Notes: a model not told the origin generated them from the sequence alone. Positions 10,949-46,059 are shown, numbered from the stretch's first letter. The stretch: 64,000 bases of DNA from Malacoraja senta (GCA_038087875.1 CM075978.1:37386001-37450000); one strand, 5' to 3'. Numbers and translations: made by a program.

Positions 10949-10954
10949 TTGACA

Positions 10955-12812: not shown

Positions 12813-13012
12813 NNNNNNNNNNNNNNNNNNNNNNNNNNNNNNNNNNNNNNNNNNNNNNNNNNNNNNNNNNNNNNNNNNNNNNNNNNNNNNNNNNNNNNNN
12901 NNNNNNNNNNNNNNNNNNNNNNNNNNNNNNNNNNNNNNNNNNNNNNNNNNNNNNNNNNNNNNNNNNNNNNNNNNNNNNNNNNNNNNNNNNNNNNNNNNNN
13001 NNNNNNNNNNNN
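12813..13012. other. Assembly gap (200 N)
   Basis: Run of n. Confidence 1.
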
Positions 13013-13607: not shown

Positions 13608-16600
13608 TTAATCAGGTGAATTTAAGAATTTTGTTGATACTTCACCAACTCGGACAGAAAATGACACAATATCAATGTCAGTACCTGGTTCTTTGGCCAC
13701 AACCTTGGCAGCATCAGCATCTTGTGAGGATGAAACATCTTTCTTTGATGTTGTAATGCCAAAGTCCACATCTGGAAATGTAAATTTAGGAATAGAAACT
13801 TTGAATGTTGACACTTTCACCGCTGGCAGTTTCAGATCATGATCACCATCTGAATCAGTATCCATACTCAATTTTGTTGCACCATCTACAGTTGTTTCTG
13901 AGCATTCGAACTTTGGCCTTTCCAGATTGGCATAAACACCCTCCACAGAAATGCCTCCTGCATCGACATCAGCCTTGAACTTGCCTGGTACTATATCAGC
14001 TTCTGGTAATTTCACATCTACGTCAGCTTTTGGGAGTAAAAGGTCAACATTAGCTATGCTAATATCACAGCTCTTGTTTGGAGCTGATCCATCGTGAGTG
14101 GGAATTCCAAATGTTGACCCTTCAAATTTGAGAAGATTTATTTTCCGCCCCTTGCCTTCGATATCCATATCCGTTGTCTCAATGGCAACACCAAATCCTG
14201 GAGCACCCAAATCAGGGATTTTGCCCCTAACCTCTCCTTCAGGGTTTGTGAGCAAAATGTCCATATCTGGCTCTTCCAGACCTACGCCCATCTCTGCATC
14301 TTTGAATTTTGGAAGAGAAATTCCAAATGGCATTTTTATGAATGGCATTTTAAACTTACTGTCATGGGCTTTAACCTTCGGGTCGGCTGAGTCAACATCT
14401 ACATCTATTGTTGGTGCATGGATGCCAGTAGGTGGAGCCTTGACGTTCATTGAGAGATCTGGTGCTGCAAAATCATGTTCAGTCTTCGACTGTCCTGCAT
14501 GAACATCAAGCTCAATGACCACCTTTGGAAGTGCAAAATCTATTGATGGCTTTTCAATCTTGGGCATTTTAAGACATGCATCACGCCCGTCCACATGAAT
14601 GATTCTTGCACCAAAATCAGCTTCCAACCTGTCACGTTTCATATCAGCTTCTTGCAATTTCAAATCCAAATCAGCTTTGGAGTGAGAAATGTCAACTTGG
14701 GGCAAACTGACATCAAGACTCATTTGAGAAGCTGATCCATCAGGAGCAGAAATTCCAAAATCTGGCCTTTTAAATTTGGCAAGTTTTATTTTACCTCCTT
14801 TGCCTTTGATATCTACGTCTGGTGTGTCAATGTTAACTTCAGAATCTAGAGCACCCACGTAAGGCATATTGCCCTTTACTTCCACCTCAGGCTTTGTGAG
14901 TGAAATGTCCACATCTGGCTCTTCCAGACCTACGTCCACGTCTGGACCTTTGAATTTGGGAAGGGAAATTCCAAATGATGGCATTTTCATTGATGGCATT
15001 TTCATTGATGGTATTTTGAACTTACTGTCCCGGCCTTTCATCTTAAGGTCAGCTGAGTCCAACACTACATCAGTTGTTGGTGCATGGAAGACAGTGTCTG
15101 GAGCCTTGATGTTCATTGAGAAATCTGGTGCGGCAACATCAAATTCAGGCTTCGACAGACCTGCATCAATATCAAATTTTCCTTCCACGTTTAGCGCTGC
15201 ACGATCTATTGGTGGCATTGTAATCTCTGGTATTTTAATACTTGCATCAGGACCTTCCACATCGAGGGTACCGGCAGAGCATTCAACTTCCAACTTGCCT
15301 GGTTCTATTTCTCCTTCTGGTAACTTCACTTCTGCATCAGCTTTTGGAAGAGAAATATCAAGTTTGGGCAGGTTGACATCAATGCTCATTTTTGGAGCTT
15401 TTAAATCAGGACCAGAAATTCCAAACTTTGGCCCTTTAAATTTGGGAAGTTTCATTTTCCCTCCCTTGCCATCGATGTCAATGTCAACTTCACACTCTGG
15501 AGCTCCCGCATCAGGAATTTTGCCCTTTACTTCCACGTCAGGCATTGTGAGTGAAATGTCCACATTTGTTTTTTTCAATCCTACATCTATATCTGGACCT
15601 TTGAATTTGGGAAGAGAAACTCCAAATCTTGGCATTTTCATTGAAGGCATTTTGAACTTACTGTCATGGCCTTTCATCTTAAGGTCAGCTGAGTCTAAAA
15701 CTACATCTATTGTTGGTGCACTGCAAAGAGTATCTGGAGCCTTGATGTCCATTGAGAGATCTGGTGCTACAACATCAAATTCAGGCTTCGACAGACCTGC
15801 ATCAATATCAAATTTTCCTTCCACGTTTAGCAATGCACAATCAATTGATGGCATTGTAATCTCTGGAATTTTAATACTTGCTTCTGGACGCTCAACATCT
15901 ATGGTACCCGCTTGGATTTCAGCTTCTAACTCGCCACGTTTTACATCTGATAATTTCACATCTGCATCAGCTTTTGGAGAAGAAAAATTAAGTTTGGGCA
16001 CGTTGGCAACAATGCTCATTTTTGGAGCCTTTATATCAGGACCAGAAGTTCCAAATTTTGGCCCTTTAAATTTGGGAAGTTTAATTTTCCCTCCCTTGCC
16101 TTTGATGTCCACGTCCGGTGTGTCAATGGCAACTTCACACTTGAGAGCACCCACATTAGGCATTTTGCCCTTTACTTCTATGTCAGGCTTGGTAAGTGAA
16201 ATGTCCACGTCTGTTTTTTCTAGTCCTACATCCACATCTGGACCTTTGAATTTGGGAAGAGAAACTCCAAATCTTGGCATTTTCATTGATGGCATTTTGA
16301 ACTTACTGTCCTGGCCTTTCATCTTAAGGTCAGTGGAGTCCAAATCTACATCTATTGTTGGTGCATGGAAGCCAGTATCTGGAGCCTTGATGTCCATTGA
16401 GAAATCTGGTGCTGCTACATCAACTTCAGGTTTCGACAGACCTGCATCAATATCAAATTTTCCTTTCACGTTTGGCGCTGCATGATCTATTAATGGCATT
16501 GTAATCTCTGGTATTTTAACACTTGCATCAGGACCTTCCACATCTAGGGTACCGGCAGAGCACTCAACTTCCAACTTGCCTGGTTTTATTTCTCCTTCTG

Positions 16601-19600
16601 GTAACTTCACTTCTGCATCAGCTTTTGGAAGAGAAATATCAAGTTTGGGCAGGTTGACATCAATGCTCATTTTTGGAGCTTTTATATCAGGACCAGAAAT
16701 TCCAAATTTTGGCCCTTTAAATTTGGAAAGTTTCATTTTCCCTCCCTTGTCCTCGATGTCGATGTCAACTTCACACTCTGGAGCACCCGCATCCGGCATT
16801 TTGCCCGTTACTTCTACATCAGGCATTGTGAGTGAAATGTCCACATCTGTTTTTTTCAGTCCTACATCAACATCTGGACCTTTGAATTTGGGAAGAGTAA
16901 CTCCAAATCTTGGCATTTTCATTGATGGCATTTTGAACTTACTCTCATGGGATTTCATCTTAAGGTCAACTGAGTCTAAATCTACATCTATTGTTGGTGG
17001 ATGGAACCCAGCAGCTGGAGCATTGACATCCATTGAGAGATCTGGTGCTGCAACATCAAGTTCAGGCTTCGACTGTCCTATATCAAAATCAAATTTTCCT
17101 TCCACGTTTGGCACTACAATATCTAGAGATGGTTTTTCAAACTCAGTCATTTTCAGACTTGTTTCAGGACCCTCAACATTTATGGTACCCGCTCGGATTT
17201 CAGCTTCTAACTCGCCAGGTTTCACATCTGATAATTTCACATGTGCATCAGCTTTTGGAAGCGAAAAATCAAGTTTGGGCAGGTCGACATCAATGTTCAT
17301 TTTTGAAACTTTTATATCAGGACCAGAAATTCCAAATTTTGGCCCTTCAAATTTAGAAACTTTCATTTTCCCTCCCTTGCCTTTGATGTCCACATCCGGT
17401 GTGTCAATGGCAACTTCACACTCTGGTGCACCCACATCACGCATTTTGCCCTTTACTTCCACGTCAGGAATGGTGAATGAAATGTCCCCATCTGGCATTT
17501 TCAGTTCTCCATCCACATGTGAAGCTTTGAATTTGGGAAGGGAAATTCCAAATGATGGCATTTTCATTGATGGCATTTTCATTGATGGCATTTTGAACTT
17601 TCTGCCCTGGCCTTTCATCTTCAGGTCGGTTGAGTCTACATCTACATCTATTGTTGGTGCATGGAAGCCAGTATCTGTAGCCTTGATGTCCATTGAGAAA
17701 TCTGGTGCTGCAACATCAAATTCAGGTTTCGACAGACCTGCATCAATATCAAATTTTCTTTCCACATTTGGTGCTGCAAGATCTATTGATGGCATTCTAA
17801 TCTCTGGTATATTAATACTTGCATCAGGACCTTCCACATCGAGGGCACCGGCAGAGCATTCAACTTCCAACTTGCCTGGTATTATTTCTCCTTCTGGTAA
17901 CTTCACTTCTGCATCAGCTTTTGGAAGAGAAATATCAAGTTTGGGCAGGTTGACATCAATGCCCATTTTTGGAGCTTTTATATCAGGACCAGAAATTCCA
18001 AATTTTGGCACTTTAAATTTGGAATGTTTCATTTTCCCTCCCTTGCCTTCGATGTCAATGTCAACTTCAAACTCTGGAACACACGCATCAGGAATTTTGC
18101 CCTTTACTTCCACGTCAGGCATTGTGAGTGAAATGTCCACATCTGTTTTTTTCAGTCCTACATCAACATCTGGACCTTTGAATTTGGGAACAGAAACTCC
18201 AAATCTTGGCATTTTCATTGATGGCATTTTGAACTTTCTGTCGTGGTCTTTCACCTTCAGGTCAGTTGAGTCTAAATGTACATCTATTGTTGGTGCATGG
18301 ATGTCAATAGCTGGAGCATTGACGTCCATTGAGAGATCGTGTGCTGCAACAGCAAGTTCAGAATTCAACACCCCTTTATCAGCATCAAATTTACCTTCCA
18401 CCTTTGGCACTGTGCTATCCATTGATGGCTTTGTAATCTCTGGTATTTTAATACTTGCTTCAGGACCTTCCACATCCACGGTACCAGCAAGGAATTCAAC
18501 TTCGAACTTGCCTGGTTTAATTTCTCCTTCTGGAAACTTCACTTCTGCATCAGCTTTTGGAAGAGAAATATCCAGTTTGGGCAGGTTGACATCAATGCTC
18601 ATTTTTGAAGCTTTTATATCAGGACCAGAAATTCCAAATTTTGGCCCTTTAAATTTAGGAAATTTAATTTTCCCTCCCTTGCCTTTCATGTCCACGTCCA
18701 AGGTGTCAATGGCAATTTCACACTCTGGAGCACCCACATCAGGCATTTTGGCCTTTATTACCATGTCAGGCTTTGTGAGTGAAATGTCCACATCTGTTTT
18801 TTTCAGTCCTACATCCACTTCGGGACCTTTGAATTTGGGAAGAGAAACTGCAAATTGTGGCATTTTCATTGATGGCATTTTGAACTTACTGTCCTGGCCT
18901 TTCAGGTTAACGTCAGCTGAGTCTAAAACTACATCTATTGTTGGTGCATGGAGGACAGTATCTGGAGTCTTGATGTCCATTGATAGATCTGGTGCTACAA
19001 CATCAAATTCAGGCTTCGACAGACCTGCATCAATATCAAATTTTCCTTCCACGTTTGGCAATGCACGATCAATTGATGGCATTGTAATCTCTGGTATTTT
19101 AATACTTGCTTCTGGACCCTCAACATCGATGGTACCCGCTTGGATTTCAGCTTCTAACTCGCCAGGTTTTACATTTGATAATTTCACATTTGCATCAGTT
19201 TTTGGATAAGAAATATCAAGTTTGGGCACTTTGGCATCAATGCTCATTTTTGGAGCTTTTATATCAGGACCAGAAATACCAAATTTTGGCCCTTCAAATT
19301 GGGGAAGTTTAATTTTCCCTCCCTTGCCTTTGATGTCCACATCCGGTGTGTCAATGGCAACTTCACACTCGAGAGCACCCGCATCAGGCATTTTGCCCTT
19401 TACTTCCACGTCATAATTGGTGAGTGAAATGTCCACATATGGTTTTTTTTGTCCATCATCCACATCTGAACCTTTGAATTTGGGAAGAGAAATTCCAAAT
19501 GATGGCATTTTCATTGATGGCATTTTCATTGATGGCATTTTGAACATACTGTCCTGGCCTTTCAGCTTGAGGTCAGTTGAGTCCACGACCACATCTATTG

Positions 19601-37600: not shown

Positions 37601-40600
37601 CTGTTTTTTTCTGTCCTACATCAACATCTGTACCTTTGAATTTGGGAACAGAAACTCCAAATCCTGGCATTTTCATTGATGGCATTTTCATTGATGGCAT
37701 TTTGAACTTTCTGTCGTGGTCTTTCACCTTCAGGTCAGTTGAGTCTAAATCTACATCTATTGTTGGTGCATGGATGTCAATAGCTGGAGCATTGACGTCC
37801 ATTGAGAGATCGTGTGCTGCAACTGCAAGTTCAGAATTCAACACCCCTTTATCAGCATCAAATTTACCTTCCACCTTTGGCACTGTGCTATCCATTGATG
37901 GCTTTGTAATCTCTGGTATTTTAATACTTGCTTCAGGAACTTCCACATCCACGGTACCAGCAAGGAATTCAACTTCGAACTTGCCTGGTTTTATTTCTCC
38001 TTCTGGAAACTTCACTTCTGCATCAGCTTTTGGAAGAGAAATATCCAGTTTGGGCATGTTGACATCAATGCTCATTTTTGGAGCTTTTATATCAGGACCA
38101 GAAATTCCAAATTTTGGCCCTTTAAATTTAGGAAGTTTAATTTTCCCTCCCTTGCCTTTCATGTCCACGTCCAAGGTGTCAATGGCAATTTCACACTCTG
38201 GAGCACCCACATCAGGCATTTTGGCCTTTATTACCATGTCAGGCTTTGTGAGTGAAATGTCCACATCTGTTTTTTTCAGTCCTACATTCACTTCGGGACC
38301 TTTGAATTTGGGAAGAGAAACTGCAAATTGTGGCATTTTCATTGATGGCATTTTGAACTTACTGTCCTGGCCTTTCAGGTTAACGTCAGCTGAGTCTAAA
38401 ACTACATCTATTGTTGGTGCATGGAGGACAGTATCTGGAGTCTTGATGTCCATTGATAGATCTGGTGCTACAACATCAAATTCAGGCTTCGACAGACCTG
38501 CATCAATATCAAATTTTCCTTCCACGTTTGGCAATGCACGATCAATTGATGGCATTGTAATCTCTGGTATTTTAATACTTGCTTCTGGACCCTCAACATT
38601 GATGGTACCCGCTTGGATTTCAGCTTCTAACTCGCCAGGTTTTACATCTGATAATTTCACATTTGCATCAGTTTTTGGATAAGAAATATCAAGTTTGGGC
38701 AGGTTGGCATCAATGCTCATTTTTTGAGCCTTTATATCAGGACGAGAAATTCCAAATTTTGGCTCTTTAAATATGGGAAGTTTAATTTTCCCTCCCTTGC
38801 CTTTGATGTCCATGTCCGGTGTGTCAATGGCAACTTCACACTCGAGAGCACCCGCATCAGGCATTTTGCCCTTTACTTCTACGTCAGCCTTGGTGAGTGA
38901 AATGTCCACATATGTTTTTTTTTGTCCTACATCCACATCTGAACCTTTGAATTTGGGAAGCGTAACTCCAAATCTTGGCATTTTCTTTGATGGCATTTTG
39001 AACTTACTCTCATGGCCTTTCATTTTGTGGTCAGCTGAGTCTAAATCTACATCTATTGTTGGTGGATGGAACCCAACAGCTGGAGCATTGACATCCATTG
39101 AGAGATCTGGTGCTGCAACATCAAGTTCAGGCTTCGACAGTCCTGTATCAAAATCATATTTTCCTTCCACGTTTGGCACTGCAATATCTAGAGATGGTTT
39201 TTCAAACTCAGTCATTTTCAGACTTGTTTCAGGACCCTCAACATCTATGGTACCCGCTCGGATTTCAGCTTCTAACTCGCCAGGTCTCACATCTGATAAT
39301 TTCACATGTGCATCAGCTTTTGGAAGTGAAACATCAAGTTTGGGCAGGTTGACTTCAATGTTCATTTTTGGAGCTTTTATATCAGGACCAGAAATACCAA
39401 ATTTTCGCCCTTCAAATTTAGGAAGTTTCATTTTCCCTCCCTTGCCTTTGATGTCCACATCCGGTGTGTCAATGGCAACTTCACACTCTGGAGCACCCAC
39501 ATCCGCCATTTTGCCCTTTACTTCCACGTCATAATTGGTGAGTGAAATGTCCCCATCTGGCATTTTCAGTTCTCCATCCACATGTGAAGCTTTGAATTGG
39601 GGAAGGGAAATTCCAAATGATGGCATTTTCATTGATGGCATTTTCATTGATGGCATTTTGAACATACTGTCCTGACCTTTCATCTTGAGGTCAGTTGAGT
39701 CCAGCACCACATCTATTGTTGGTGCACGGAAGCCAGTATCTGGAGCCTTGATGTCCATTGAGAAATCTGGTGCTGCAACATCAAATTCAGGTTTCGACAG
39801 ACCTGCATCAATATCAAATTTTCCTTCCACGTTTGCCGCTGCACGATCTATTGATGGCATTGTAATCTCTGGTATTTTAATACTTGCATCAGGACCTTCC
39901 ACATCGAGGGTACCGGCAGTGCATTCAACTTCCAACTTGCCTGGTTTTATTTCTCCTTCTGGTAACTTCACTTCTGCATCAGCTTTTGGAAGAGAAATAT
40001 CAAGTTTGGGCAGGTTGACATCAATGCCCATTTTGGGAGCTATTATATCAGGACCAGAAATTCCAAATTTTGGCCCTTTAAGTTTGGAACGTTTCTTTTT
40101 CCCTCCCTTGCCTTTGATGTCAATGTCAACTTCACACTCTGGAGCACCCGCATCAGGAATTTTGCCCTTTACTTCCACGTCAGGCATTGTGAGTGAAACT
40201 TCCACATCTGTTTTTTTCTGTCCTACATCAACATCTGTACCTTTGAATTTGGGAACTGAAACTCCAAATCTTGGCATTTTCATTGATGGCATTTTGAACT
40301 TTCTGTCGTGGTCTTTCACCTTCAGGTCAGTTGAGACTAAATCTACATCTATTGTTGGTGCATGGATGTCAATAGCTGGAGCATTGACATCCATTGAGAG
40401 ATCGTGTGCTGCAACAGCAAGTTCAGAATTCAACACCCCTTTATCAGCATCAAATTTACCTTCCACCTTTGGCACTGTGCTATCCATTGATGGCTTTGTA
40501 ATCTCTGGTATTTTAATACTTGCTTCAGGACCTTCCACATCCACGGTACCAGCAAGTAATTCAACTTCGAACTTGCCTGGTTTTATTTCTCCTTCTGGAA

Positions 40601-42959
40601 ACTTCACTTCTGCATCAGCTTTTGGAAGAGAAATATCCAGTTTGGGCAGGTTGACATCAATGCTCATTTTTGGAGCTTTTATATCAGGACCAGAAATTCC
40701 AAACTGTGACCCTTTAAATTTGGGAAGTTTCATCTTCCCTCCCTTGCCTTTCATGTCCACGTCCAAGGTGTCAGTGGCAATTTCACACTCTGGAGCACCC
40801 ACATCAGGCATTTTGGCCTTTACTACCATGTCAGGCTTTGTGAGTGAAATGTCCACATCTGTTTTTTTTAGTCCTACATCCACATCGGGACCTTTGAATT
40901 TGGGAAGAGAAACTGCAAAAGGTGACATTTTCATTGATGGCATTTTGAACTTACTGTCCTGGCCTTTCACCTTATGGTCAGCTGAGTCTAAAACTACATC
41001 TATTGTTGGTGCATTGAAGCCAGCATCTGGAGCCTTGATGTCCATTGATAGATCTGGTGCTGCAACATCAAATTCAGGCTTCGACAGTCCTGCATCAATA
41101 TCAAATTTTCCTTCCACGTTTGGCAATGCACGATCAATTGATGGCATTGTAATCTCTGGTATTTTAATACTTGCTTCAGGACCTTCAACATCTATTGTAA
41201 TCGCTCGGATTTCAGCTTCTAATTCGCCAGGTTTTACATCTGATAATTCCACATCTGCATCAGCTTTTGGAGGAGAAAAATCAAGTTTGGACACGTTGGC
41301 ATCAATGCTCATTTTTTGAGCCTTTATATCAGGACCAGAAATTCCAAACTTTGGCCCTGTTAATTTGGGAAGAGAAACTCGAAATAATGGCATTTTTAAT
41401 TTACTGTCCTGGCCTTTCATCTTATGGTCGGCTGAGTCTAAATCTACATCTATTGCGGGAGCTTTGACGTTCATTGCGATGTCTTGTGCTGCAACATCAA
41501 GTTCAGGCTTCGACACATCTGCATCAATATCACTTTTAAGTTCTACCTTTGGCAGTGCAATTTCTATTGATGTCTTTTCAATCTGAGTTCTTTTAAGATT
41601 CTCTTCAGGACCCCCCACATCTTTGGCCCCAGCATGAAATTCAGCTTCCAACTTGCCTGGTTTTATCGCTCCTGATAATTTCACATCTGCATTAGTTTTT
41701 GCGAGTGAAATTTCAACTTTGGCCTTTTTACTTTTTGATTTTTGTATTTTACTTCCTTTCTTTGTTTGTTTAATTGGTGTTGCTCCAAACTGTTTTGAAC
41801 TTGTAACACATTCTTGTCCTTTTGCCGTGAGTTCTCCATCCCTGATGTTATCTTGATTAGAGGCACCATCAAGTGAAATTGCACCATCAAGTTTCTTTGT
41901 TCCTGTCTTCACATTTTGAATAATGGTTTGTTCTTCTAGGCCACTCATCTGCTCACTCTCCATTGTGCTTGGCCCTGTTATTACCTCTGTAGTTGTCACA
42001 GCAAGATCTTTGCTTGTTTGTGAAACATCAAATTTCATTAGACTGACATCAATTGCAATTGTAGAAGATTCAGTTCCAGAGATTTTATCTTTGGGTTTGG
42101 TGATTTTTGATTGCTTTATTTTCTGTTGCCTCTCATTATTCTTTTTCTCGTTTTCTGTTTCAAATGATTGAATAGAAATATCTGTTGCTTGCTTGCTCAT
42201 ATCTTCATCATGCTTCTTTGGTAATGGTAACATAAAATCTGTTTTTACATCTGTAATGTTAGGTTCTTTTTTTGAGATATCCTCTGGCATTGATTCAAAA
42301 TGTGCTCTTTCCTCTAGTATTTTGGTGGCAATATGTTGTGTTGTAAGAATTGGTCCTGGAAGCACAAATTTAGCTATTTTCAGTTTTGGCATTTTGACAT
42401 TGGATTTACTGCTAATATTGTCGCATTCCATTTGTTCACTTTGTTTATCCAGCATTTGGGTACTTTGATTTGTAGTTATCATTATAGTTTCATTTGATCT
42501 TTGTGGTGTACTAGCTGTATTTATTTGCAATGTGTCTTGTTCTACAGCAGCACAATCCTTGATTCCAATCAAAATGTCTTGCTTTTCATCTTCAGAAGTT
42601 TCTTTTTTCCCCATGTTTACAGCACTTGTACCAATATGCGGTAGTTTTATTTTTCTTTTGTTTTTTTTCCTTTTTTGAGGGTTTTCAATATCTGTGCATG
42701 TTGAGGTAATGTCATATTGATCGTGTTGTTCTGGTTCTGTTAAGCTTTGAGACCTGTTGAGTTTATGTGACTTTGACTTTTTGAAACTTGAAAACTTGGG
42801 ACAGATAAAGCTGACATCGGATACTTCAGCCTTCTTCGTCTTCCCCTTCTGAGTGGTTTCTTGAATGAGTGGTCTTTCTTCGGCATTACATTCATCAGAA
42901 ATACCTCTTGTATTTGATTTACTTGCATAGAGTTTCATAAAAAAGTCTTCCTCGGCTCC
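13608..42959 (-). CDS. AHNAK2: AHNAK2 giant terminal coding exon (29,352 nt; about 43 tandem 210-222-aa AHNAK-type repeats)
   Basis: 9776-aa ORF with AHNAK-family motifs (KFKMPSMKMP, KGPDVDV, KFGISGPDIKAPK). Acceptor ttcttctcttag precedes 42959 and adds GAEEDFF in phase 0 ahead of the ORF-track Met. Stop TAA at 13608-13610. Confidence 0.93.
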   Translation of the reverse strand, partial: GAEEDFFMKLYASKSNTRGISDECNAEERPLIQETTQKGKTKKAEVSDVSFICPKFSSFKKSKSHKLNRSQSLTEPEQHDQYDITSTCTDIENPQKRKKNKRKIKLPHIGTSAVNMGKKETSEDEKQDILIGIKDCAAVEQDTLQINTASTPQRSNETIMITTNQSTQMLDKQSEQMECDNISSKSNVKMPKLKIAKFVLPGPILTTQHIATKILEERAHFESMPEDISKKEPNITDVKTDFMLPLPKKHDEDMSKQATDISIQSFETENEKKNNERQQKIKQSKITKPKDKISGTESSTIAIDVSLMKFDVSQTSKDLAVTTTEVITGPSTMESEQMSGLEEQTIIQNVKTGTKKLDGAISLDGASNQDNIRDGELTAKGQECVTSSKQFGATPIKQTKKGSKIQKSKSKKAKVEISLAKTNADVKLSGAIKPGKLEAEFHAGAKDVGGPEENLKRTQIEKTSIEIALPKVELKSDIDADVSKPELDVAAQDIAMNVKAPAIDVDLDSADHKMKGQDSKLKMPLFRVSLPKLTGPKFGISGPDIKAQKMSIDANVSKLDFSPPKADADVELSDVKPGELEAEIRAITIDVEGPEASIKIPEITMPSIDRALPNVEGKFDIDAGLSKPEFDVAAPDLSMDIKAPDAGFNAPTIDVVLDSADHKVKGQDSKFKMPSMKMSPFAVSLPKFKGPDVDVGLKKTDVDISLTKPDMVVKAKMPDVGAPECEIATDTLDVDMKGKGGKMKLPKFKGSQFGISGPDIKAPKMSIDVNLPKLDISLPKADAEVKFPEGEIKPGKFEVELLAGTVDVEGPEASIKIPEITKPSMDSTVPKVEGKFDADKGVLNSELAVAAHDLSMDVNAPAIDIHAPTIDVDLVSTDLKVKDHDRKFKMPSMKMPRFGVSVPKFKGTDVDVGQKKTDVEVSLTMPDVEVKGKIPDAGAPECEVDIDIKGKGGKKKRSKLKGPKFGISGPDIIAPKMGIDVNLPKLDISLPKADAEVKLPEGEIKPGKLEVECTAGTLDVEGPDASIKIPEITMPSIDRAAANVEGKFDIDAGLSKPEFDVAAPDFSMDIKAPDTGFRAPTIDVVLDSTDLKMKGQDSMFKMPSMKMPSMKMPSFGISLPQFKASHVDGELKMPDGDISLTNYDVEVKGKMADVGAPECEVAIDTPDVDIKGKGGKMKLPKFEGRKFGISGPDIKAPKMNIEVNLPKLDVSLPKADAHVKLSDVRPGELEAEIRAGTIDVEGPETSLKMTEFEKPSLDIAVPNVEGKYDFDTGLSKPELDVAAPDLSMDVNAPAVGFHPPTIDVDLDSADHKMKGHESKFKMPSKKMPRFGVTLPKFKGSDVDVGQKKTYVDISLTKADVEVKGKMPDAGALECEVAIDTPDMDIKGKGGKIKLPIFKEPKFGISRPDIKAQKMSIDANLPKLDISYPKTDANVKLSDVKPGELEAEIQAGTINVEGPEASIKIPEITMPSIDRALPNVEGKFDIDAGLSKPEFDVVAPDLSMDIKTPDTVLHAPTIDVVLDSADVNLKGQDSKFKMPSMKMPQFAVSLPKFKGPEVNVGLKKTDVDISLTKPDMVIKAKMPDVGAPECEIAIDTLDVDMKGKGGKIKLPKFKGPKFGISGPDIKAPKMSIDVNMPKLDISLPKADAEVKFPEGEIKPGKFEVEFLAGTVDVEVPEASIKIPEITKPSMDSTVPKVEGKFDADKGVLNSELAVAAHDLSMDVNAPAIDIHAPTIDVDLDSTDLKVKDHDRKFKMPSMKMPSMKMPGFGVSVPKFKGTDVDVGQKKTDVEVSLTMPDVEVKGKIPDAGAPECEVDIDIKGKGGKMKLSKLKGPKFGISGPDIIAPKMGIDVNLPKLDISLPKADAEVKLPEGEIKPGKLEVECTAGTLDVEGPDASIKIPEITMPSIDRAAANVEGKFDIDAGLSKPEFDVAAPDFSMDIKAPDTGFRAPTIDVVLDSTDLKMKGQDSMFKRPSMKMPSLAVSIAKFKGPDVEVGLKKPDVDISLTKPDAEVKGKMPNVGVLKCEVANDTSDVDIKGKGGKIKLPKFKGTKFGISGPDIKAPKMSIDANVPKLDISYPKTDANVKLSDVKPGELEAEIQAVIIDVEGPEASIKIPKITMPSIDRALPNVEGTFDIDAGLSQPEFDVVAPDLSMDIKTPVTVLHAQRIDVVLDPADVKLKGQDSKFKMPSMKMPQFAVSLPKFKGPDVDVGLKKTDVDISLTKPDMVVKAKMPDVGAPECEIAIDTLDVDMKGKGGKIKLPKFKGPKFGISGPDIKAPKMSIDVNLPKLDISLPKADAEVKFPEGEIKPGKFEVELLAGTVDVEGPEASIKISEITKPSMDSTVPKVEGKFDADKGVLNSELAVAAHDLSMDVNAPAINIHAPTIDVDFDSTDLKVKDHDRKFKMPSMRMPRFGVSVPKFKGPDVVVGLKKTDVDVSLTMPDVEVKGKITDAGAPECEVDIDIEGKGGKIKHSKFKVPKFGISGPDIKAPKMGIDVNLPKLDISLPKADAEVKLPEGEIKPGKLEVECSAGTLDVEGPDASIKIPEITMPSIDCAVPNVEGKFDIDAGLSKTEFDVAAPDFSMDIKAPDTGFRAPTIDVVVDSTDLKLKGQDSMFKMPSMKMPSMKMPSFGISLPKFKGSDVDDGQKKPYVDISLTKYDVEVKGKMPDAGALECEVAIDTPDVDIKGKGGKIKLPQFEGPKFGISGPDIKAPKMSIDANVPKLDISYPKTDANVKLSDVKPGELEAEIQAGTIDVEGPEASIKIPEITMPSIDRALPNVEGKFDIDAGLSKPEFDVVAPDLSMDIKTPDTVLHAPTIDVVLDSADVNLKGQDSKFKMPSMKMPQFAVYLPKFKGPEVDVGLKKPDVDISLTKPDMVIKAKMPDVGAPECEIAIDTLDVDMKGKGGKIKLPKFKGPKFGISGPDIKASKMSIDVNLPKLDISLPKADAEVKFPEGEIKPGKFEVEFLAGTVDVEGPEASIKIPEITKPSMYSTVPKVEGKFYADKGVLNSELAVAAHDLSMDINAPAIDIHAPTIDVDLVSTDLKVKDHDRKLKMPSMKMPSMRMPRFGVSVPKFNGPDVVVGLKKTDVDVSLTMPDVEVKGKITDAGAPECEVDIDIEGKGGKIKHSKFKVPKFGISGTDIKAPKMGIDVNLPKLDISLPKADAEVKLPEGEIKPGKLEVECSAGTLDVEGPDASIKIPEITMPSIDRAVPNVEGKFDIDAGLSKTEFDVAAPDFSMDIKTPDTGFRAPTIDVVLDSTDLNMKGQDSMFKIPSMKMPSLAVSLPKFKGPDVDVGLEKTDVDISLTKPDVEVKGKMLNVGALKCEVANDTSDVDIKGKGGKFKLPKFKGPKFGISGPDIKAPKMSIDVNLPKLDISLPKADAEVKFPEGEIKPGKFEVELLAGTVDVEGPEASIKIPEIKKPSMDSTVPKVEGKFDADKGVLNSELAVAAHDLSMDVNAPAIDIHAPTIDVDLDSTDLKVKDHDRKFKMPSMKMPRFGVSVPKFKGPDVDVGLKKTDVDVSLTMPDVEVKGKITDAGAPEFEVDIDIEGKGGKIKHSKFKVPKFGISGPDIKAPKMGIDVNLPKLDISLPKADAEVKLPEGEIKPGKFEFECSAGTLDVEGPEASIKIPEITKPSMDSTVPKVEGKFDADKGVLNSELAVAAHNLSMDINAPAIDIHAPTIDVDLVSTDLKVKDHDRKLKMPSMKMPSMRIPRFGVSVPKFKGPDVVVGLKKTDVDVSLTMPDVEVKGKITDAGAPECEVDIDIEGKGGKIKHSKFKVPKFGISGPDIKTPKMGIDVNLPKLDISLPKADAEVKLPEGEIKPGKLEVECSAGTLDVEGPDASIQIPEITMPSIDRAVPNVEGKFDIDAGLSKTEFDVAAPDFSMDIKAPDTGFRAPTIDVVVDSTDLKLKGQDSMFKMPSMKMPSMKMPSFGISLPKFKGSDVDDGQKKPYVDISLTKYDVEVKGKMPDAGALECEVAIDTPDVDIKGKGGKIKLPQFEGPKFGISGPDIKAPKMSIDANVPKLDISYPKTDANVKLSDVKPGELEAEIQAGTIDVEGPEASIKIPEITMPSIDRALPNVEGKFDIDAGLSKPEFDVVAPDLSMDIKTPDTVLHAPTIDVVLDSADVNLKGQDSKFKMPSMKMPQFAVYLPKFKGPEVDVGLKKPDVDISLTKPDMVIKAKMPDVGAPECEIAIDTLDVDMKGKGGKIKLPKFKGPKFGISGPDIKASKMSIDVNLPKLDISLPKADAEVKFPEGEIKPGKFEVEFLAGTVDVEGPEASIKIPEITKPSMYSTVPKVEGKFYADKGVLNSELAVAAHDLSMDVNAPAIDIHAPTIDVDLDSTDLKVKDHDRKFKMPSMKMPRFGVSVPKFKGPDVDVGLKKTDVDISLTMPDVEVKGKIPDVGAPEFEVDIDMEGKGGKMKHSKFKVPKFGISGPDIKAPKMGIDVNLPKLDISLPKADAEVKLPEGEIKPGKFEVECSAGTLDVEGPEASIKIPEITKPSMDSTVPKVEGKFDADKGVLNSELAVAAHNLSMDINAPAIDIHAPTIDVDLVSTDLKVKDHDRKLKMPSMKMPSMRIPRFGVSVPKFKGPDVVVGLKKTDVDVSLTMPDVEVKGKITDAGAPECEVDIDIEGKGGKIKHSKFKVPKFGISGPDIKTPKMGIDVNLPKLDISLPKADAEVKLPEGEIKPGKLEVECSAGTLDVEGPDASIQIPEITMPSIDRAVPNVEGKFDIDAGLSKTEFDVAAPDFSMDIKAPDTGFRAPTIDVVVDSTDLKLKGQDSMFKMPSMKMPSMKMPSFGISLPKFKGSDVDDGQKKPYVDISLTNYDVEVKGKMPDAGALECEVAIDTPDVDIKGKGGKIKLPQFEGPKFGISGPDIKAPKMSIDANVPKLDISYPKTDANVKLSDVKPGELEAEIQVGTIDVEGPEASIKIPEITMPSIDRALANVEGKFDIDAGLSKPEFDVVAPDLSMDIKTPDTVLHAPTIDVVLDSADVNLKGQDSKFKMPSMKMPQFAVSLPKFKGPEVDVGLKKTDVDISLTKPDMVIKAKMPDVGAPECEIAIDTLDVDMKGKGGKIKLPKFKGPKFGISGPDIKASKMSIDVNLPKLDISLPKADAEVKFPEGEIKPGKFEVEFLAGTVDVEGPEASIKIPEITTPSMVSTVPKVEGKFDADKGVLNSELAVAAHDLSMDINAPAIDIHAPTIDVDLVSTDLKVKDHDRKLKMPSMKMPSMRMPRFGVSVPKFKGPDVVVGLKKTDVDVSLTMPDVEVKGKITDAGAPECEVDIDIEGKGGKIKHSKFKVPKFGISGPDIKATKMGIDVNLPKLDISLPKADAEVKLPEGEIKPGKLEVECSAGTLDVEGPDASIKIPEITMPSIDRAVPNVEGKFDIDAGLSKTEFDVAAPDFSMDIKAPDTGFRAPTIDVVLDSTDLNMKGQDSMFKIPSMKMPSLAVSLPKFKGPDVDVGLEKTDVDISLTKPDVEVKGKMLNVGALKCEVANDTSDVDIKGKGGKFKLPKFKGPKFGISGPDIKAPKMRIDVNLPKLDISLPKADAEVKFPEGEIKPGKFEVELLAGTVDVEGPETSIKIPEITKPSMDSTVPKVEGKFDADKGVLNSELAVAAHDLSMDVNAPAIDIHAPTIDVDLDSTDLKVKDHDRKFKMPSLKMPRFGVSVPKFKGPDVDVGLNKTDVDISLTLPDVEVKGKIPDAGAPEFEVDIDMEGKGGKMKHSKFKVPKFGISGPDIKAPKMGIDVNLPKLDISLPKADAEVKLPEGEIKPGKFEVEFLAGTVDVEGPEASIKIPEITKPSMDSTVPKVEGKFDADKGVLNSELAVAAHDLSMDINAPAIDIHAPKIDVDLDSTDLKVKDHDRKFKMPSMKMPRFGVSVPKFKGPDVDVGLKKTDVDISLTMPDVEVKGKITDAGAPECEVDIDIEGKGGKIKHSKFKVPKFGISGPDIKAPKMGIDVNLPKLDISLPKADAEVKLPEGEIKPGKLEVECSAGTLDVEGPDASIKIPEITMPSIDRAVPNVEGKFDIDAGLSKTEFDVAAPDFSMDIKAPDTGFRAPTIDVVVDSTDLKLKGQDSMFKMPSMKMPSMKMPSFGISLPKFKGSDVDDGQKKPYMDISLTNYDVKVKGKMPDAGALECEVAIDTPDVDIKGKGGKIKLPQFEGPKFGISGPDIKAPKMSIDANVPKLDISYPKTDANVKLSDVKPGELEAEIQAGTIDVEGPEASIKIPEITMPSIDRALPNVEGKFDIDAGLSKPEFDVVAPDLSMYIKTPDTVLHAPTIDVVLDSADVNLKGQDSKFKMPSMKMPQFAVYLPKFKGPEVDVGLKKTDVDISLTKPDMVIKAKMPDVGAPECEIAIETLDVDMKGKGGKIKLPKFKGPKFGISGPDIKASKMSIDVNLPKLDISLPKADAEVKLPEGEIKPGKFEVEFLAGTVDVEGPEASIKIPEITKPSMDSTVPKVEGKFDADKGVLNSELAVAAHDLSMDINAPAIDIHAPKIDVDLDSTDLKVKDHDRKFKMPSMKMPRFGVSVPKFKGPDVDVGLKKTDVDISLTMPDVEVKGKITDAGAPECEVDIDIEGKGGKIKHSKFKVPKFGISGPDIKAPKMGIDVNLPKLDISLPKADAEVKLPEGEIKPGKLEVECSAGTLDVEGPDASIKIPEITMPSIDRAVPNVEGKFDIDAGLSKTEFDVAAPDFSMDIKAPDTGFRAPTIDVVVDSTDLKLKGQDSMFKMPSMKMPSMKMPSFGISLPKFKGSDVDDGQKKPYMDISLTNYDVKVKGKMPDAGALECEVAIDTPDVDIKGKGGKIKLPQFEGPKFGISGPDIKAPKMSIDANVPKLDISYPKTDANVKLSDVKPGELEAEIQAGTIDVEGPEASIKIPEITMPSIDRALPNVEGKFDIDAGLSKPEFNVVAPDLSMYIKTPDTVLHAPTIDVVLDSADVNLKGQDSKFKMPSMKMPQFAVYLPKFKGPEVDVGLKKTDVDISLTKPDMVIKAKMPDVGAPECEIAIETLDVDMKGKGGKIKLPKFKGPKFGISGPDIKASKMSIDVNLPKLDISLPKADAEVKFPEGEIKPGKFEVEFLAGTVDVEGPEASIKIPEITKPSMDSTVPKVEGKFDADKGVLNSELAVAAHDLSMDINAPAIDIQAPTIDVDLVSTDLKVKDHDRKLKMPSMKMPSMRMPRFGVSVPKFKGPDVVVGLKKTDVDVSLTMPDVEVKGKITDAGAPECEVDIDIEGKGGKIKHSKFKVPKFGISGPDIKAPKMGIDVNLPKLDISLPKADAVVKLPEGEIKPGKLEVECSAGTLDVEGPDASIKIPEITMPSIDRAVPNVEGKFDIDAGLSKTEFDVAAPDFSMDIKAPDTGFRAPTIDVVLDSTDLNMKGQDSMFKIPSMKMPSLAVSLPKFKGPDVDVGLEKTDVDISLTKPDVEVKGKMLNVGALKCEVANDTSDVDIKGKGGKFKLPKFKGPKFGISGPDIKAPKMSIDVNLPKLDISLPKADAEVKFPEGEIKPGKFEVELLAGTVDVEGPETSIKIPEITKPSMDSTVPKVEGKFDADKGVLNSELAVAAHNLSMDVNAPAIDIHAPTIDVDLDSTDLKVKDHDRKFKMPSMKMPRFGVSVPKFKGPDVDVGLKKTDVDISLTLPDVEVKGKIPDVGAPEFEVDIDMEGKGGKMKHSKFKVPKFGISGRDIKAPKMGIDVNLPKLDISLPKADTEVKLPEGEIKPGKLEVECSAGTLDVEGPDASIKIPEITMPSIDRAVSNVEGKFDIDAGLSKTEFDVAAPDFSMDIKAPDTGFRAPTIDVVVDSTDLKLKGQDSMFKMPSMKMPSMKMPSFGISLPKFKGSDVDDGQKKPYVDISLTNYDVEVKGKMPDAGALECEVAIDTPDVDIKGKGGKIKLPQFEGPKFGISGPDIKAPKMSIDAKVPKLDISYPKTDANVKLSNVKPGELEAEIQAGTIDVEGPEASIKIPEITMPSIDRALPNVEGKFDIDAGLSKPEFDVVAPDLSMDIKTPDTVLHAPTIDVVLDSADVNLKGQDSKFKMPSMKMPQFAVSLPKFKGPEVDVGLKKTDVDISLTKPDMVIKAKMPDVGAPECEIAIDTLDVDMKGKGGKIKFPKFKGPKFGISGPDIKASKMSIDVNLPKLDISLPKADAEVKFPEGEIKPGKFEVEFLAGTVDVEGPEASIKIPEITKPSMDSTVPKVEGKFDADKGVLNSELAVAAHDLSMDVNAPAIDIHAPTIDVHLDSTDLKVKDHDRKFKMPSMKMPRFGVSVPKFKGPDVDVGLKKTDVDISLTMPDVEVKGKIPDACVPEFEVDIDIEGKGGKMKHSKFKVPKFGISGPDIKAPKMGIDVNLPKLDISLPKADAEVKLPEGEIIPGKLEVECSAGALDVEGPDASINIPEIRMPSIDLAAPNVERKFDIDAGLSKPEFDVAAPDFSMDIKATDTGFHAPTIDVDVDSTDLKMKGQGRKFKMPSMKMPSMKMPSFGISLPKFKASHVDGELKMPDGDISFTIPDVEVKGKMRDVGAPECEVAIDTPDVDIKGKGGKMKVSKFEGPKFGISGPDIKVSKMNIDVDLPKLDFSLPKADAHVKLSDVKPGELEAEIRAGTINVEGPETSLKMTEFEKPSLDIVVPNVEGKFDFDIGQSKPELDVAAPDLSMDVNAPAAGFHPPTIDVDLDSVDLKMKSHESKFKMPSMKMPRFGVTLPKFKGPDVDVGLKKTDVDISLTMPDVEVTGKMPDAGAPECEVDIDIEDKGGKMKLSKFKGPKFGISGPDIKAPKMSIDVNLPKLDISLPKADAEVKLPEGEIKPGKLEVECSAGTLDVEGPDASVKIPEITMPLIDHAAPNVKGKFDIDAGLSKPEVDVAAPDFSMDIKAPDTGFHAPTIDVDLDSTDLKMKGQDSKFKMPSMKMPRFGVSLPKFKGPDVDVGLEKTDVDISLTKPDIEVKGKMPNVGALKCEVAIDTPDVDIKGKGGKIKLPKFKGPKFGTSGPDIKAPKMSIVANVPKLNFSSPKADADVKLSDVKRGELEAEIQAGTIDVERPEASIKIPEITMPSIDCALLNVEGKFDIDAGLSKPEFDVVAPDLSMDIKAPDTLCSAPTIDVVLDSADLKMKGHDSKFKMPSMKMPRFGVSLPKFKGPDIDVGLKKTNVDISLTMPDVEVKGKIPDAGAPECEVDIDIDGKGGKMKLPKFKGPKFGISGPDLKAPKMSIDVNLPKLDISLPKADAEVKLPEGEIEPGKLEVECSAGTLDVEGPDASIKIPEITMPPIDRAALNVEGKFDIDAGLSKPEFDVAAPDFSMNIKAPDTVFHAPTTDVVLDSADLKMKGRDSKFKIPSMKMPSMKMPSFGISLPKFKGPDVDVGLEEPDVDISLTKPEVEVKGNMPYVGALDSEVNIDTPDVDIKGKGGKIKLAKFKRPDFGISAPDGSASQMSLDVSLPQVDISHSKADLDLKLQEADMKRDRLEADFGARIIHVDGRDACLKMPKIEKPSIDFALPKVVIELDVHAGQSKTEHDFAAPDLSMNVKAPPTGIHAPTIDVDVDSADPKVKAHDSKFKMPFIKMPFGISLPKFKDAEMGVGLEEPDMDILLTNPEGEVRGKIPDLGAPGFGVAIETTDMDIEGKGRKINLLKFEGSTFGIPTHDGSAPNKSCDISIANVDLLLPKADVDVKLPEADIVPGKFKADVDAGGISVEGVYANLERPKFECSETTVDGATKLSMDTDSDGDHDLKLPAVKVSTFKVSIPKFTFPDVDFGITTSKKDVSSSQDADAAKVVAKEPGTDIDIVSFSVRVGEVSTKFLNSPD
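14000..41650 (-). repeat. Coding tandem array, unit 630-666 bp, about 43 units, with 1947-bp higher-order repeat
   Basis: The FGISGPD-type codon motif recurs 43 times from 14091 to 41328, with spacings of 630/636/645/651/666 bp (648 once, at the diverged end). Confidence 0.95.
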
Positions 42960-43309
42960 CTAAGAGAAGAAATGGACCGTTATTTTCTATCTTTTTGTGA
43001 GGGATAAATCCAGCTGAAGAGGCAAACAGACACAAGTATCCACTGTAAAAGTACTGAACGTGAAACAGTTTACAGTATTTATAAGGCTAGAGTTTTACAA
43101 CATATTTATAGCTCTGGCACTTTAAAATTACTAAAGATGGCCTTAAGTATATGGGCTAAACCTTTTAACCAGCCGGTAACAAAGAAGCATCTTCAATGTA
43201 TCTCACAAAATTGTAACGCTTATTTTGTGCATCATAAGACCTTTATGTTATTTTTAATGACTTGCCTAGCATTGTTGAACACAGAGTTTTCAAGAACACC
43301 GGGAAAAGA

Positions 43310-43900
43310 AACAAGAGTTTAGGAACAGGAGTAGGCACAAAATATCCTTGAGCTTGCATTGTCATTCAGTACAATCAAGGTTGTTCTGACCCTTTGCCTG
43401 GATTTGATCTTCCTACCCAAACCCATACCCTCGATTTCCCCGATAAACTAAAAAATCTGTCTTAGCCTTCAATATATTTAATGACGTAGGATCCATTGTT
43501 GTATGGAATGGCAAAATTAATAAACTCACAACCCGCTGAGAAGACATTCCTCCTTATCACAGACTTAATGATCAATATATTGTCTTGAGAATGTGCCCCC
43601 TAGTTTCAGAGACATCTAACGTGAATCATTCTCTCTTGGCATTAACCTTCTCAACTCCCTCCAGAATCTTATAAATTCCAATAATTCTCAAGTCTTGTTC
43701 TTCCAAACATTAGAGTTGAACCCTTTTCTTCTCAGTCTTTCTTCATAAAATGGCACTTTTAATCCAGGAATCAGCCTGGATACCAAATCATTGCCTTTAA
43801 GGCAATAACTTCTTATTTTAATGCAATTTTAAGTGCTTCTCCTGCGCACGCTGTAGACATCAATTTTGCATGAATTGTAATTTGATTATAGGTGTAGCAT
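43310..43900 (-). mobile_element. Old CR1 3' fragment
   Basis: Diverged similarity to the CR1 3' end (ggaacaggagtaggc...cattcagtacaatca). Confidence 0.55.
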
Positions 43901-44179
43901 ACCAAATATAATGTTGGAACAGGGTGAAAAGTAAAGGTAAAACTACACCTTGTGGGAGGAGGACATTTTCCATTTAGCCATTTAGCACAACTATGGGCCG
44001 AGACCACAACCTTCTTTAAAGGAATATGAATACAAGTGACATGTCTCAATGATTACTGACTGATTGTCTTTTGATCCGTTGTCATGAAGTACTCTGCAAG
44101 ACTGGTAATGATGCATATCAACTCATGCCTTAGCAATGACCTGTCCAATTCACCCATGACCACAACAGATCAACAGTGG

Positions 44180-44345
44180 AGACAAAAGTAACTGCAGATG
44201 TTGGTGTACAAAACAAAAACACAAGTGCTGGAGTAATTCAGCAGATCAGGCAGCATATTTGGAGGACATGGAAAGGCAACTTTTCGGGTTCAGGACCTTT
44301 CTTCAGACTTCAGTTTCTCTGCTGAGTTACTCTAGCACTTTGTTT
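44180..44345 (-). repeat. Copy of the same short repeat in the intron preceding the giant exon
   Basis: actgcagatgttgg...ctggagtaattcagc...gacctttcttcagac. Confidence 0.65.
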
Positions 44346-44409
44346 TTTCAGATTAACAGTGGATGCAGGAAAGCAATTAAGGTTTTAACATTTAGGTTTT
44401 AACATTTAC

Positions 44410-45889: not shown

Positions 45890-46059
45890 CGCATTAGGCT
45901 TTGTTCCTTTTCCTTCAACTTCGACTGATTCTACAGTACTAGGTATTGTTCTTTTTAGGCAGTATTGCATTTTATATGGTTCTGAGTACTGTAAAATCTT
46001 GAGTGCATCTTCATATTTGACATTATCAAAATAAATTGTAGCACTGATAAGTTGATCAC
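45890..46059 (-). CDS. AHNAK2: AHNAK2 exon, PDZ C-terminal half
   Basis: tttttatcag|GT GAT CAA... translates (G)[56 protein letters not shown]|gtaggt. 170 nt, phase 1 to 0. [16 protein letters not shown] matches AHNAK2 PDZ as I recall it. Confidence 0.95.

What the first reader, a model, noticed from the sequence alone, without database searches (positions are those of the whole stretch)
13608..42959. A single 29.35-kb stop-free coding exon giving an AHNAK2 of about 10,000 aa
Seen: 9,783 consecutive sense codons from the acceptor at 42959 to the TAA at 13608, spliced in phase to the PDZ exons. Known: human AHNAK2 is about 5,800 aa, and the largest human coding exons are roughly 17-22 kb (TTN, AHNAK, MUC16). 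Inference: this would be among the longest vertebrate coding exons, encoding a scaffold above 1 MDa. The lack of any stop or TE insertion across 29 kb in an otherwise repeat-dense locus implies purifying selection or active homogenisation.
Basis: partly seen in the sequence, partly recalled or inferred. Interest (0 to 1): 0.75.

Follow-up and report, generated by a model that had tools for sequence, protein, structure and literature searches.

The report
Skate AHNAK2 giant 29-kb repeat exon
One uninterrupted 29.35-kb coding exon of a skate's AHNAK2 gene carries about 43 copies of a 215-residue repeat, giving a scaffold protein of about 10,000 residues and over 1 MDa: a real, unusually long member of a gene family already known for giant repeat exons.

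Summary
The minus strand is open for 9,783 sense codons, from the AG acceptor at 42959 to the TAA at 13608. It has no N. It splices in phase (GT-AG) to two PDZ exons at 48462-48306 and 46059-45890.

The gene is the skate orthologue of AHNAK2:
- The unique N-terminus is 94% identical to the 7,146-aa NCBI model "protein AHNAK2 [Amblyraja radiata]".
- A PDZ tree places it in the AHNAK2 clade, apart from AHNAK1.

The exon holds 42 full units of 210-222 aa plus degenerate end units. There are three unit types, arranged in a 649-aa (1,947-bp) higher-order repeat.

- **Concerted evolution:** central units are 96-100% identical within the species but only 82-94% identical to Amblyraja units. The first and last units are orthologous between the species.
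- **Copy number:** word depth in two DNA runs of the same species gives 10-17 copies where the assembly has 7-12. I see no sign of over-expansion.
- **Expression:** RNA contigs of a related species cover the exons, skip the intron and stop at the predicted exon boundaries.
- **Selection:** recent unit variants look neutral at the amino-acid level (omega about 1). No stops occur (5.4 expected) and all indels are in frame.

It is about 25% longer than any of the 70 AHNAK-family proteins retrieved. A full-length transcript was not shown.

The scan also noted this stretch as s1-187704.

The parts
13608..42959 (-). Giant terminal coding exon of AHNAK2: 9,783 sense codons plus TAA. Product 1,050 kDa, pI 5.06.
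41385..42959 (-). Non-repeat N-terminal part of the exon (aa 1-525), 94% identical to Amblyraja AHNAK2. It contains two degenerate proto-units (aa 276-531).
14157..41384 (-). Array of 42 full repeat units of 210-222 aa (630-666 bp). Types A/B/C form a 1,947-bp (649-aa) higher-order repeat.
18048..38801 (-). Homogenised core (units 4-35). Median best-paralogue identity is 99.4% nt. Multi-unit block duplications sit at offsets of 3, 4, 6 and 9 units. The longest exact repeat is 1,375 bp.
13611..14156 (-). Degenerate last unit and short C-terminal tail. The preceding unit (u41, 14157-14804) is orthologous to the last Amblyraja unit (91%).
42960..45889 (-). Intron between PDZ exon 2 and the giant exon, GT...AG. 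It holds very high-copy transposon fragments at 44200-44400 and 45000-45600.
45890..46059 (-). PDZ exon 2 (170 nt), ending in phase 0 before GTAGGT.
48306..48462 (-). PDZ exon 1 (157 nt). Pfam PDZ PF00595 scores 23.6 bits on this exon alone (cut-off 23.2).
51051..51155 (-). Small upstream coding exon (VCELPTEF...KDKN), 94% identical to Amblyraja AHNAK2 residues 37-72.
52084..52136 (-). Small upstream coding exon (SVQCLKDAETEPGEQDS), matching Amblyraja residues 18-37. The initiator exon was not found in the window.
12813..13012 (.). 200-N assembly gap, 596 nt downstream of the stop codon. The 3' UTR is therefore incomplete.

Best explanation
This is the giant last coding exon of the skate orthologue of AHNAK2. 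AHNAK2 is a PDZ-headed, highly charged scaffold protein with no confidently predicted fold.

The body of the exon is a tandem array of about 43 units of roughly 215 aa, organised as a three-unit (A-B-C) higher-order repeat of 1,947 bp. The array grew and was homogenised within the skate lineage by unequal crossing-over or gene conversion of blocks of 3, 4, 6 and 9 units. This happened after the split from the Amblyraja lineage (inferred from identity patterns).

Selection keeps the frame open: there are no stops, no frameshifts and no transposon insertions. It hardly constrains individual residues of the young copies. What seems to matter is an uninterrupted, long repetitive rod rather than each unit's exact sequence (inferred).

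The cellular role is taken from mammalian AHNAK and AHNAK2 and was not tested here: a membrane or costamere scaffold involved in calcium-channel regulation and membrane repair.
For: - **Frame and splicing:** open frame and splice sites.
- **Nearest proteins:** 'protein AHNAK2 [Amblyraja radiata]' is 94% identical over the unique N-terminus with the same exon junction.
- **Paralogue assignment:** the PDZ tree splits AHNAK1 from AHNAK2 with 100/99 support, and the window falls in the AHNAK2 clade. A Pfam PDZ hit supports the domain.
- **Unit anatomy:**
- **Concerted evolution:** 96-100% identity within the species against 82-94% between species for central units, with orthologous edge units.
- **Block duplications:** 99.5-100% nt identity.
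- **Copy number:** DNA runs X1 and X2 belong to the same species (3 and 10 differences in a roughly 2.9-kb single-copy contig). Repeat contigs have 10.3, 13.4 and 10.4 times (X1) and 14.1 and 16.7 times (X2) the single-copy word depth. The assembly multiplicities for the same contigs are 9.2, 11.6, 7.1, 10.0 and 11.9.
- **Expression:** RNA-library contigs of a relative about 3-4% divergent (X23) lie only on exon sequence, with zero depth in the unique intron. They stop at 42960 and 45890.
- **Selection:** 177 distinct variants in the core, 42 synonymous and 135 non-synonymous, match the neutral expectation (omega 1.05). There are no stops against 5.4 expected (P = 0.004). All 5 indel sites are multiples of 3.
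- **Structure:** AlphaFold2 on a 53-unit alignment gives pLDDT 40.9 and no secondary structure.
Against: - No read or transcript spanning the array was available. Depth evidence comes from five short contigs over units 0-1 only, and contig word depth is a rough measure.
- The RNA evidence is from a related species, at low depth, and covers only the first 1.7 kb of the exon and the PDZ exon edge. I did not see the joint itself in the truncated table.
- Omega of about 1 among young units would also fit relaxed constraint.
- A 200-N gap lies 596 nt past the stop, so the contig ends close to the array.
- Ahnak2 repeat number was wrong in the mouse reference assembly (PMC12903361), so this locus type is error-prone.
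- The long non-repeat C-terminal domain described for human AHNAK2 is not evident here.
Confidence: 0.8

Rival explanations
1. The exon is real, but its unit number is an assembly artefact. For example, haplotype copies placed in tandem or mis-joined long reads would make the true exon and protein substantially shorter.
For: The core has almost no unique 20-mers. Several multi-unit blocks are 99.5-100% identical. A scaffold gap sits 596 nt from the exon. Mouse Ahnak2 repeat number was mis-assembled in GRCm39 (PMC12903361). The Amblyraja model has only about 30 units.
Against: Contig word depth in two DNA runs gives 1.1-1.5 times the assembly's own multiplicity, not less. The longest exact repeat is 1,375 bp. 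Every 5-kb stretch differs by at least 114 bases from any other placement, so accurate long reads can place themselves uniquely.
Confidence: 0.1
2. The open frame is genomic, but the mature mRNA is shorter. Internal cryptic introns or alternative 3' ends would remove much of the array, so the 10,000-aa protein would be rarely or never made.
For: No transcript evidence exists beyond the first 1.7 kb. NCBI lists many length isoforms for AHNAK-family genes in other species. Young units show no amino-acid constraint.
Against: No stop or frameshift occurs in 29 kb, against 5.4 stops expected from the variants observed. That is hard to explain if most of the array were spliced out. Orthologues are annotated with uninterrupted arrays of 30-31 units.
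Confidence: 0.08
3. The array is a decaying or non-functional coding satellite. It would be too young to have picked up stops yet, rather than a maintained gene body.
For: Omega is about 1 among core variants, and pN/pS is 3.07 for pairs under 1% diverged.
Against: - Older units show pN/pS of 0.5-0.7.
- The 217-aa unit is conserved between skates and a hexanchiform shark.
- Edge units and the N-terminus are conserved with Amblyraja.
- Stops are fewer than expected and indels are in frame.
- The exon's 5' part is present in an RNA library of a relative.
Confidence: 0.02

Closest known systems
Human AHNAK2 (C14orf78), as summarised in PMC10682155
   Same: Same layout: small 5' exons encoding an N-terminal PDZ domain, then one giant exon encoding a central array of long tandem units. 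The PDZ domain is 57-70% identical to tetrapod AHNAK2 and falls in the same clade.
   Different: The human protein is 5,795 aa with 24 units of 165 aa, a giant exon of about 17.6 kb and a roughly 100-kDa non-repeat C-terminus. Here there are about 43 units of about 215 aa in a 3-unit higher-order repeat, a 29.35-kb exon and about 10,000 aa. No long non-repeat C-terminal domain was detected.
NCBI model 'protein AHNAK2 [Amblyraja radiata]' (P0001, 7,146 aa)
   Same: It is the orthologue. The unique N-terminus is 94% identical, the exon junction is the same, the unit is the same 217 aa, and the first and last units are orthologous.
   Different: It has about 30 units, two of them truncated, and its C-terminus ends earlier. 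Its central units are homogenised separately (82-94% between species, 96-100% within). Its shorter length may be real or may reflect its assembly or annotation.
AHNAK (AHNAK1, desmoyokin), including skate AHNAK models P0035 and P0036
   Same: It belongs to the same family, with a PDZ head, a giant repeat exon and charged K/D/P/V-rich units. The repeats are mutually detectable at 26-30% identity.
   Different: It is a separate paralogue present alongside this gene in skates. PDZ identity is only 44-48%, it forms a distinct clade (100/99 support), and its repeat periods are 192-320 aa.
Other giant repeat-bearing coding exons (human MUC16 and TTN from my own knowledge; the 24.9-kb versican exon noted in this same genome, s1-172317)
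   Same: Each is a single very long exon built by tandem amplification of a coding cassette and kept in frame.
   Different: The protein families and compartments differ: secreted or glycosylated mucin and proteoglycan, or sarcomeric titin. The exon here is longer than the human examples as I recall them (about 17-22 kb).

Membership tests
AHNAK family | N-terminal PDZ domain encoded by small 5' exons | tested here: met
   Pfam PF00595 scores 23.6 bits on window exon 48462-48306 (cut-off 23.2) and 30.1 bits on the 98%-identical Amblyraja segment. The exons are mapped.
AHNAK family | One giant exon encoding a central array of long tandem repeat units | tested here: met
   The open exon is 29,352 nt including the stop, with 42 full units of 210-222 aa.
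AHNAK family | Sequence homology of the repeats to AHNAK and AHNAK2 proteins | tested here: met
   70 hits, 65 of them with source names, and nearly all of those are named AHNAK or AHNAK2, across vertebrates. E-values run from 0 to 1e-60.
AHNAK2 (orthology, as against AHNAK1) | PDZ and N-terminus group with AHNAK2 of other vertebrates while a separate AHNAK1 exists in the same lineage | tested here: met
   The IQ-TREE PDZ tree splits AHNAK1 from AHNAK2 at 100/99. The window sits with Amblyraja AHNAK2 (100/94) and Heptranchias (98/88), next to tetrapod AHNAK2 (94/63). Skate AHNAK1 models fall in the other clade.
AHNAK2 (orthology) | Conserved gene neighbourhood | not testable with these tools
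   The window flanks (1-12800 and 52300-64000) hold only transposon debris and a DIRS element.
AHNAK2 (human-type architecture) | 165-aa repeat unit | tested here: not met
   The unit here is 210-222 aa. The period varies by lineage: 217 in chondrichthyans, 386 in turtles, 236 in a lizard, 337-359 in birds and about 150 in a marsupial and a rodent. Unit length therefore does not define the family.
AHNAK2 (human-type architecture) | Long non-repeat C-terminal domain (about 100 kDa) | tested here: inconclusive
   Only a degenerate unit and a short tail follow the array. tblastn with the C-terminal tails of Heptranchias and tetrapod AHNAK2 finds nothing downstream of 13608. A gap at 12813-13012 limits the search.
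AHNAK2 | Expressed as a giant mRNA and protein | tested here: inconclusive
   Contigs from an RNA library of a related species cover 41204-42960 and 45890-45999, with none in the unique intron. Nothing is known for the repeat body.

The most novel reading that the evidence does not exclude
This may be the longest uninterrupted protein-coding exon and the largest AHNAK-family protein yet documented in a vertebrate. Together with the 24.9-kb versican exon in the same genome, it would point to a skate-lineage tendency to amplify coding cassettes inside exons. AHNAK2 rod length could then be a fast-evolving, possibly polymorphic and selectable trait.
Probability: 0.25. Interest if true: 0.55.

Novelty: new member of a known kind. 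Interest (0 to 1): 0.4.

Why it matters
The result shows how far a coding tandem array can grow inside a single exon while staying translatable: 29 kb and over 1 MDa. It gives a clean example of concerted evolution of a three-unit higher-order repeat within a protein. The pattern of selection, on frame integrity but not on residues, says something about what giant scaffold repeats are for. It also marks a locus where annotation pipelines and short-read assemblies will under-call the gene. It does not reveal a new kind of gene or mechanism.

Tried and rejected
- **Pfam on three 800-1,000-aa pieces of the exon:** this gave only spurious hits, one of them marginally above its cut-off (DUF6470, DUF4097, a beta-helix domain). 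No curated model covers AHNAK repeats.
- **Profile search of solved structures** with a 53-unit alignment found nothing.
- **AlphaFold2 on that alignment** gave pLDDT 40.9 with no secondary structure, so I ran no fold search.
- **The Heptranchias or tetrapod C-terminal tail** was not found downstream of the stop.
- **One Amblyraja exon and the initiator exon:** residues 73-103 of the Amblyraja model and its first 17 residues were not found in the window.
- **Summed bin depths from read laying** (10-32 times single copy) were not used as copy number, because overlapping and variant contigs are summed. I used per-contig depth against matched 31-mer multiplicity instead.
- **Literature searches** found no paper on chondrichthyan AHNAK2 and no systematic 'longest exon' survey.
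- **The long plus-strand ORFs (up to 1,225 aa)** were considered as an antisense gene and rejected. They are TTG-started by-products of a stop-poor repeat propagated along the array.

Full report
**1. The observation**

The ORF listing reports a minus-strand ORF at 13608..42938 of 9,776 aa. Walking the frame upstream from the TAA at 13608-13610 gives 9,783 sense codons. It ends at an in-frame TAG at 42960-42962. The only N run in the window is 12813-13012, outside the exon. The coordinates, the codon count and the stop are therefore exact.

**2. Gene model**

tblastn with the nearest protein maps five coding exons on the minus strand:
- 52136-52084
- 51155-51051
- PDZ exon 1, 48462-48306
- PDZ exon 2, 46059-45890
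- the giant exon, 42959-13608

All junctions read here are GT-AG. The split codon between the PDZ exons (G|GT) and the phase-0 junction 45890>42959 keep one frame. That frame reproduces ...RLSMREGDQLIS... and ...GTKPNA|GAEEDFF... of the orthologue.

PDZ exon 1 alone reaches the Pfam PDZ gathering score, 23.6 bits against 23.2.

The initiator exon and one roughly 31-aa exon of the Amblyraja model were not found in the window. Splicing 51051 directly to 48462 is also in frame.

The giant exon's product is 9,783 aa, 1,050 kDa, pI 5.06. With the upstream exons the protein is about 9,950-10,000 aa.

**3. Identity**

A search restricted to the C-terminal 621 residues returned 70 proteins of 5,433-7,914 aa. 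65 of them carry source names, and nearly all of those are named AHNAK or AHNAK2. The best hit is 'protein AHNAK2 [Amblyraja radiata]' (P0001, 7,146 aa). The next is an AHNAK-like protein of Heptranchias perlo (P0002, 7,526 aa).

A search with the unique N-terminal 520 residues found only these two, at 94% and 53% identity.

The PDZ region is 57-70% identical to tetrapod AHNAK2 and 44-48% identical to chondrichthyan AHNAK1.

An IQ-TREE tree separates the two paralogue clades with 100/99 support. It puts the window with Amblyraja AHNAK2 and Heptranchias, next to tetrapod AHNAK2.

The window therefore comes from a skate close to, but not the same as, Amblyraja radiata, and the gene is AHNAK2.

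**4. Anatomy of the array**

Nearest-repeat distances peak at 636/651 bp and 1,947 bp at DNA level, and at 212/217 and 649 aa at protein level.

Cutting at the GKGGK motif and scanning with an HMM of the units gives 42 full units of 210-222 aa (window 41384-14157). Two degenerate proto-units precede the array, and a degenerate unit and a short tail follow it.

Clustering gives three main unit types in the order ABCDABCABCABCBBCABBCABCBBCABCABCBCABCDCACEF.

The length classes 212, 217 and 222 arise from a 15-bp micro-repeat (KMPSM) and a few other in-frame indels.

Units 4-35 have a median best-paralogue identity of 99.4% nt. Blocks of 3, 4, 6 and 9 units are duplicated at 99.5-100%. Edge units are only 76-95% identical to their best paralogue. 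The 5' edge units 2 and 3 match the 3' edge units 36 and 37 best. That is the pattern expected when an array grows from its middle.

**5. Is the copy number real?**

The longest exact internal repeat is 1,375 bp. Every 5-kb stretch differs by at least 114 bases from any other ungapped placement, and every 8-kb stretch by at least 1,425. Accurate long reads can therefore resolve the array. Short reads cannot.

Two public DNA runs of the same species, X1 and X2, hold the locus. Their single-copy contigs over 41265-44248 differ from the window at 3 and 10 positions, and have word depths of 24.2 and 3.77.

I rebuilt the repeat contigs from the listed differences and compared their depth ratio with the assembly's own 31-mer multiplicity:

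| Run | Depth ratio to single copy | Assembly 31-mer multiplicity |
|---|---|---|
| X1 | 10.3 | 9.2 |
| X1 | 13.4 | 11.6 |
| X1 | 10.4 | 7.1 |
| X2 | 14.1 | 10.0 |
| X2 | 16.7 | 11.9 |

Over-expansion predicts depth ratios below the assembly multiplicity. All five are above it.

This sample is limited. It rests on five short contigs over units 0-1, and contig word depth is a coarse measure.

Ahnak2 repeat number was wrong in the mouse reference assembly (PMC12903361), so spanning reads remain the decisive test.

**6. Expression**

Run X23 is an RNA library of a related organism, about 3-4% divergent. It gives contigs at 41204-41380, 41716-41968, 42329-42655, 42767-42960 and 45890-45999.

Its depth is zero over the unique intron at 43000-44200 and 45600-45800. 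Two contigs end at the predicted exon edges. One 409-nt contig aligns only from 45890 onward, leaving 269 letters that do not match the intron. That is what a spliced contig would look like, but the joint itself was not in the truncated table.

This supports transcription and both splice boundaries in a close relative. Nothing is known about the repeat body.

**7. Evolution and selection**

Central units are 96-100% identical (aa) to another unit of the same species. They are only 82-94% identical to any Amblyraja unit, and the same holds in reverse. The first unit (86%) and the last full unit (91%) are closer between species than within. This is concerted evolution or lineage-specific amplification, with orthologous array edges.

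The 217-aa unit is shared with a hexanchiform shark, which has 31 units. Repeat periods differ in other vertebrates: 386 aa in turtles, 236 in a lizard, 337-359 in birds and about 150 in a marsupial and a rodent. Human AHNAK2 has 165-aa units (PMC10682155). Turnover of the array is therefore a family trait.

Pooled pairwise pN/pS among same-type units is 0.73. It falls to 0.54 for the oldest pairs and rises to 3.07 for pairs under 1% diverged. The pairs are not independent.

I also counted each variant once against the type consensus in units 4-35. There are 177 variants, 42 synonymous and 135 non-synonymous. That matches the neutral expectation (omega 1.05). None creates a stop, against 5.4 expected (P = 0.004).

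All five indel sites among units are multiples of three.

My reading is that selection acts against truncation, and little or none acts on individual residues of young copies. Much of the 'cleanliness' of the 29 kb simply reflects the array's youth.

**8. Structure and mechanism**

The exon product is rich in K (13%), D (11%), P (9%) and V (8.5%).

A profile of 53 units matches no solved structure. AlphaFold2 gives pLDDT 40.9 with no secondary structure. This fits a flexible or extended repetitive rod but does not prove it.

The cellular role is carried over from the mammalian literature (PMC10682155) and was not tested here: a PDZ-anchored membrane or cytoskeletal scaffold with roles in calcium-channel regulation and membrane repair.

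A long non-repeat C-terminal domain, as in human AHNAK2, was not detected.

**9. How unusual is it?**

Among 70 AHNAK-family proteins retrieved with an allowed length range of about 5,400-17,100 aa, the longest is 7,914 aa. The skate protein is about 25% longer. Its exon exceeds the 17.6 kb reported for human AHNAK2 (PMC10682155). It also exceeds the human record exons as I recall them (about 17-22 kb, from my own knowledge). I found no systematic survey of exon lengths.

The same genome was noted to carry a 24.9-kb versican exon (s1-172317, not checked here).

No paper on chondrichthyan AHNAK2 turned up.

**10. Verdict**

The finding is real and correctly interpreted. It is a quantitative extreme within a family already known for giant repeat exons, not a new kind of element.

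Noticed in passing
window 14869-41319, + strand (e.g. 24613-28290): Nine long antisense ORFs of 458-1,225 aa, all TTG-started, lie opposite the array. Two are exactly 644 aa and sit 1,947 bp apart. They look like by-products of a stop-poor antisense frame copied along the repeat, not a gene.
   Followed up: partly
window 12813-13312: A 200-N gap lies 596 nt downstream of the stop codon. A 20-bp minisatellite (4.1 copies, 13233-13312) sits in the presumed 3' UTR. The only poly(A) signal seen before the gap is ATTAAA at 13563.
   Followed up: partly
window 44200-44400 and 45000-45600: Intron segments reach summed word depths of about 50,000 and 105,000 in a 24x DNA run. That implies transposon fragments present in thousands of copies in this genome.
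   Followed up: no
window 46764-47705, 49368-49976, 8004-10741: Reverse-transcriptase-like ORF fragments (LINE-type) lie in the intron between the PDZ exons, in the intron upstream of PDZ exon 1, and downstream of the gene. The coding exons themselves are free of insertions.
   Followed up: no
window 58016-62793: A DIRS-like element (tyrosine recombinase, RT/RNase H and gag-like ORFs) lies upstream of the mapped AHNAK2 exons. It is probably in a 5' intron or 5' flank. The scan noted it separately as s1-187705.
   Followed up: no
P0001 (Amblyraja radiata AHNAK2 model), residues 4635-4819, 6567-6716 and the C-terminus: The orthologue's model has two truncated repeat units. It ends about 250 aa before the point where the window's ORF ends. 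Its array may be under-assembled or under-annotated.
   Followed up: partly
window 18048-38801 (units 4-35): Unit pairs under 1% diverged show pooled pN/pS of 3.07 (about 118 non-synonymous against 11 synonymous differences, pairs not independent). This excess of amino-acid changes among the youngest copies is unexplained.
   Followed up: partly
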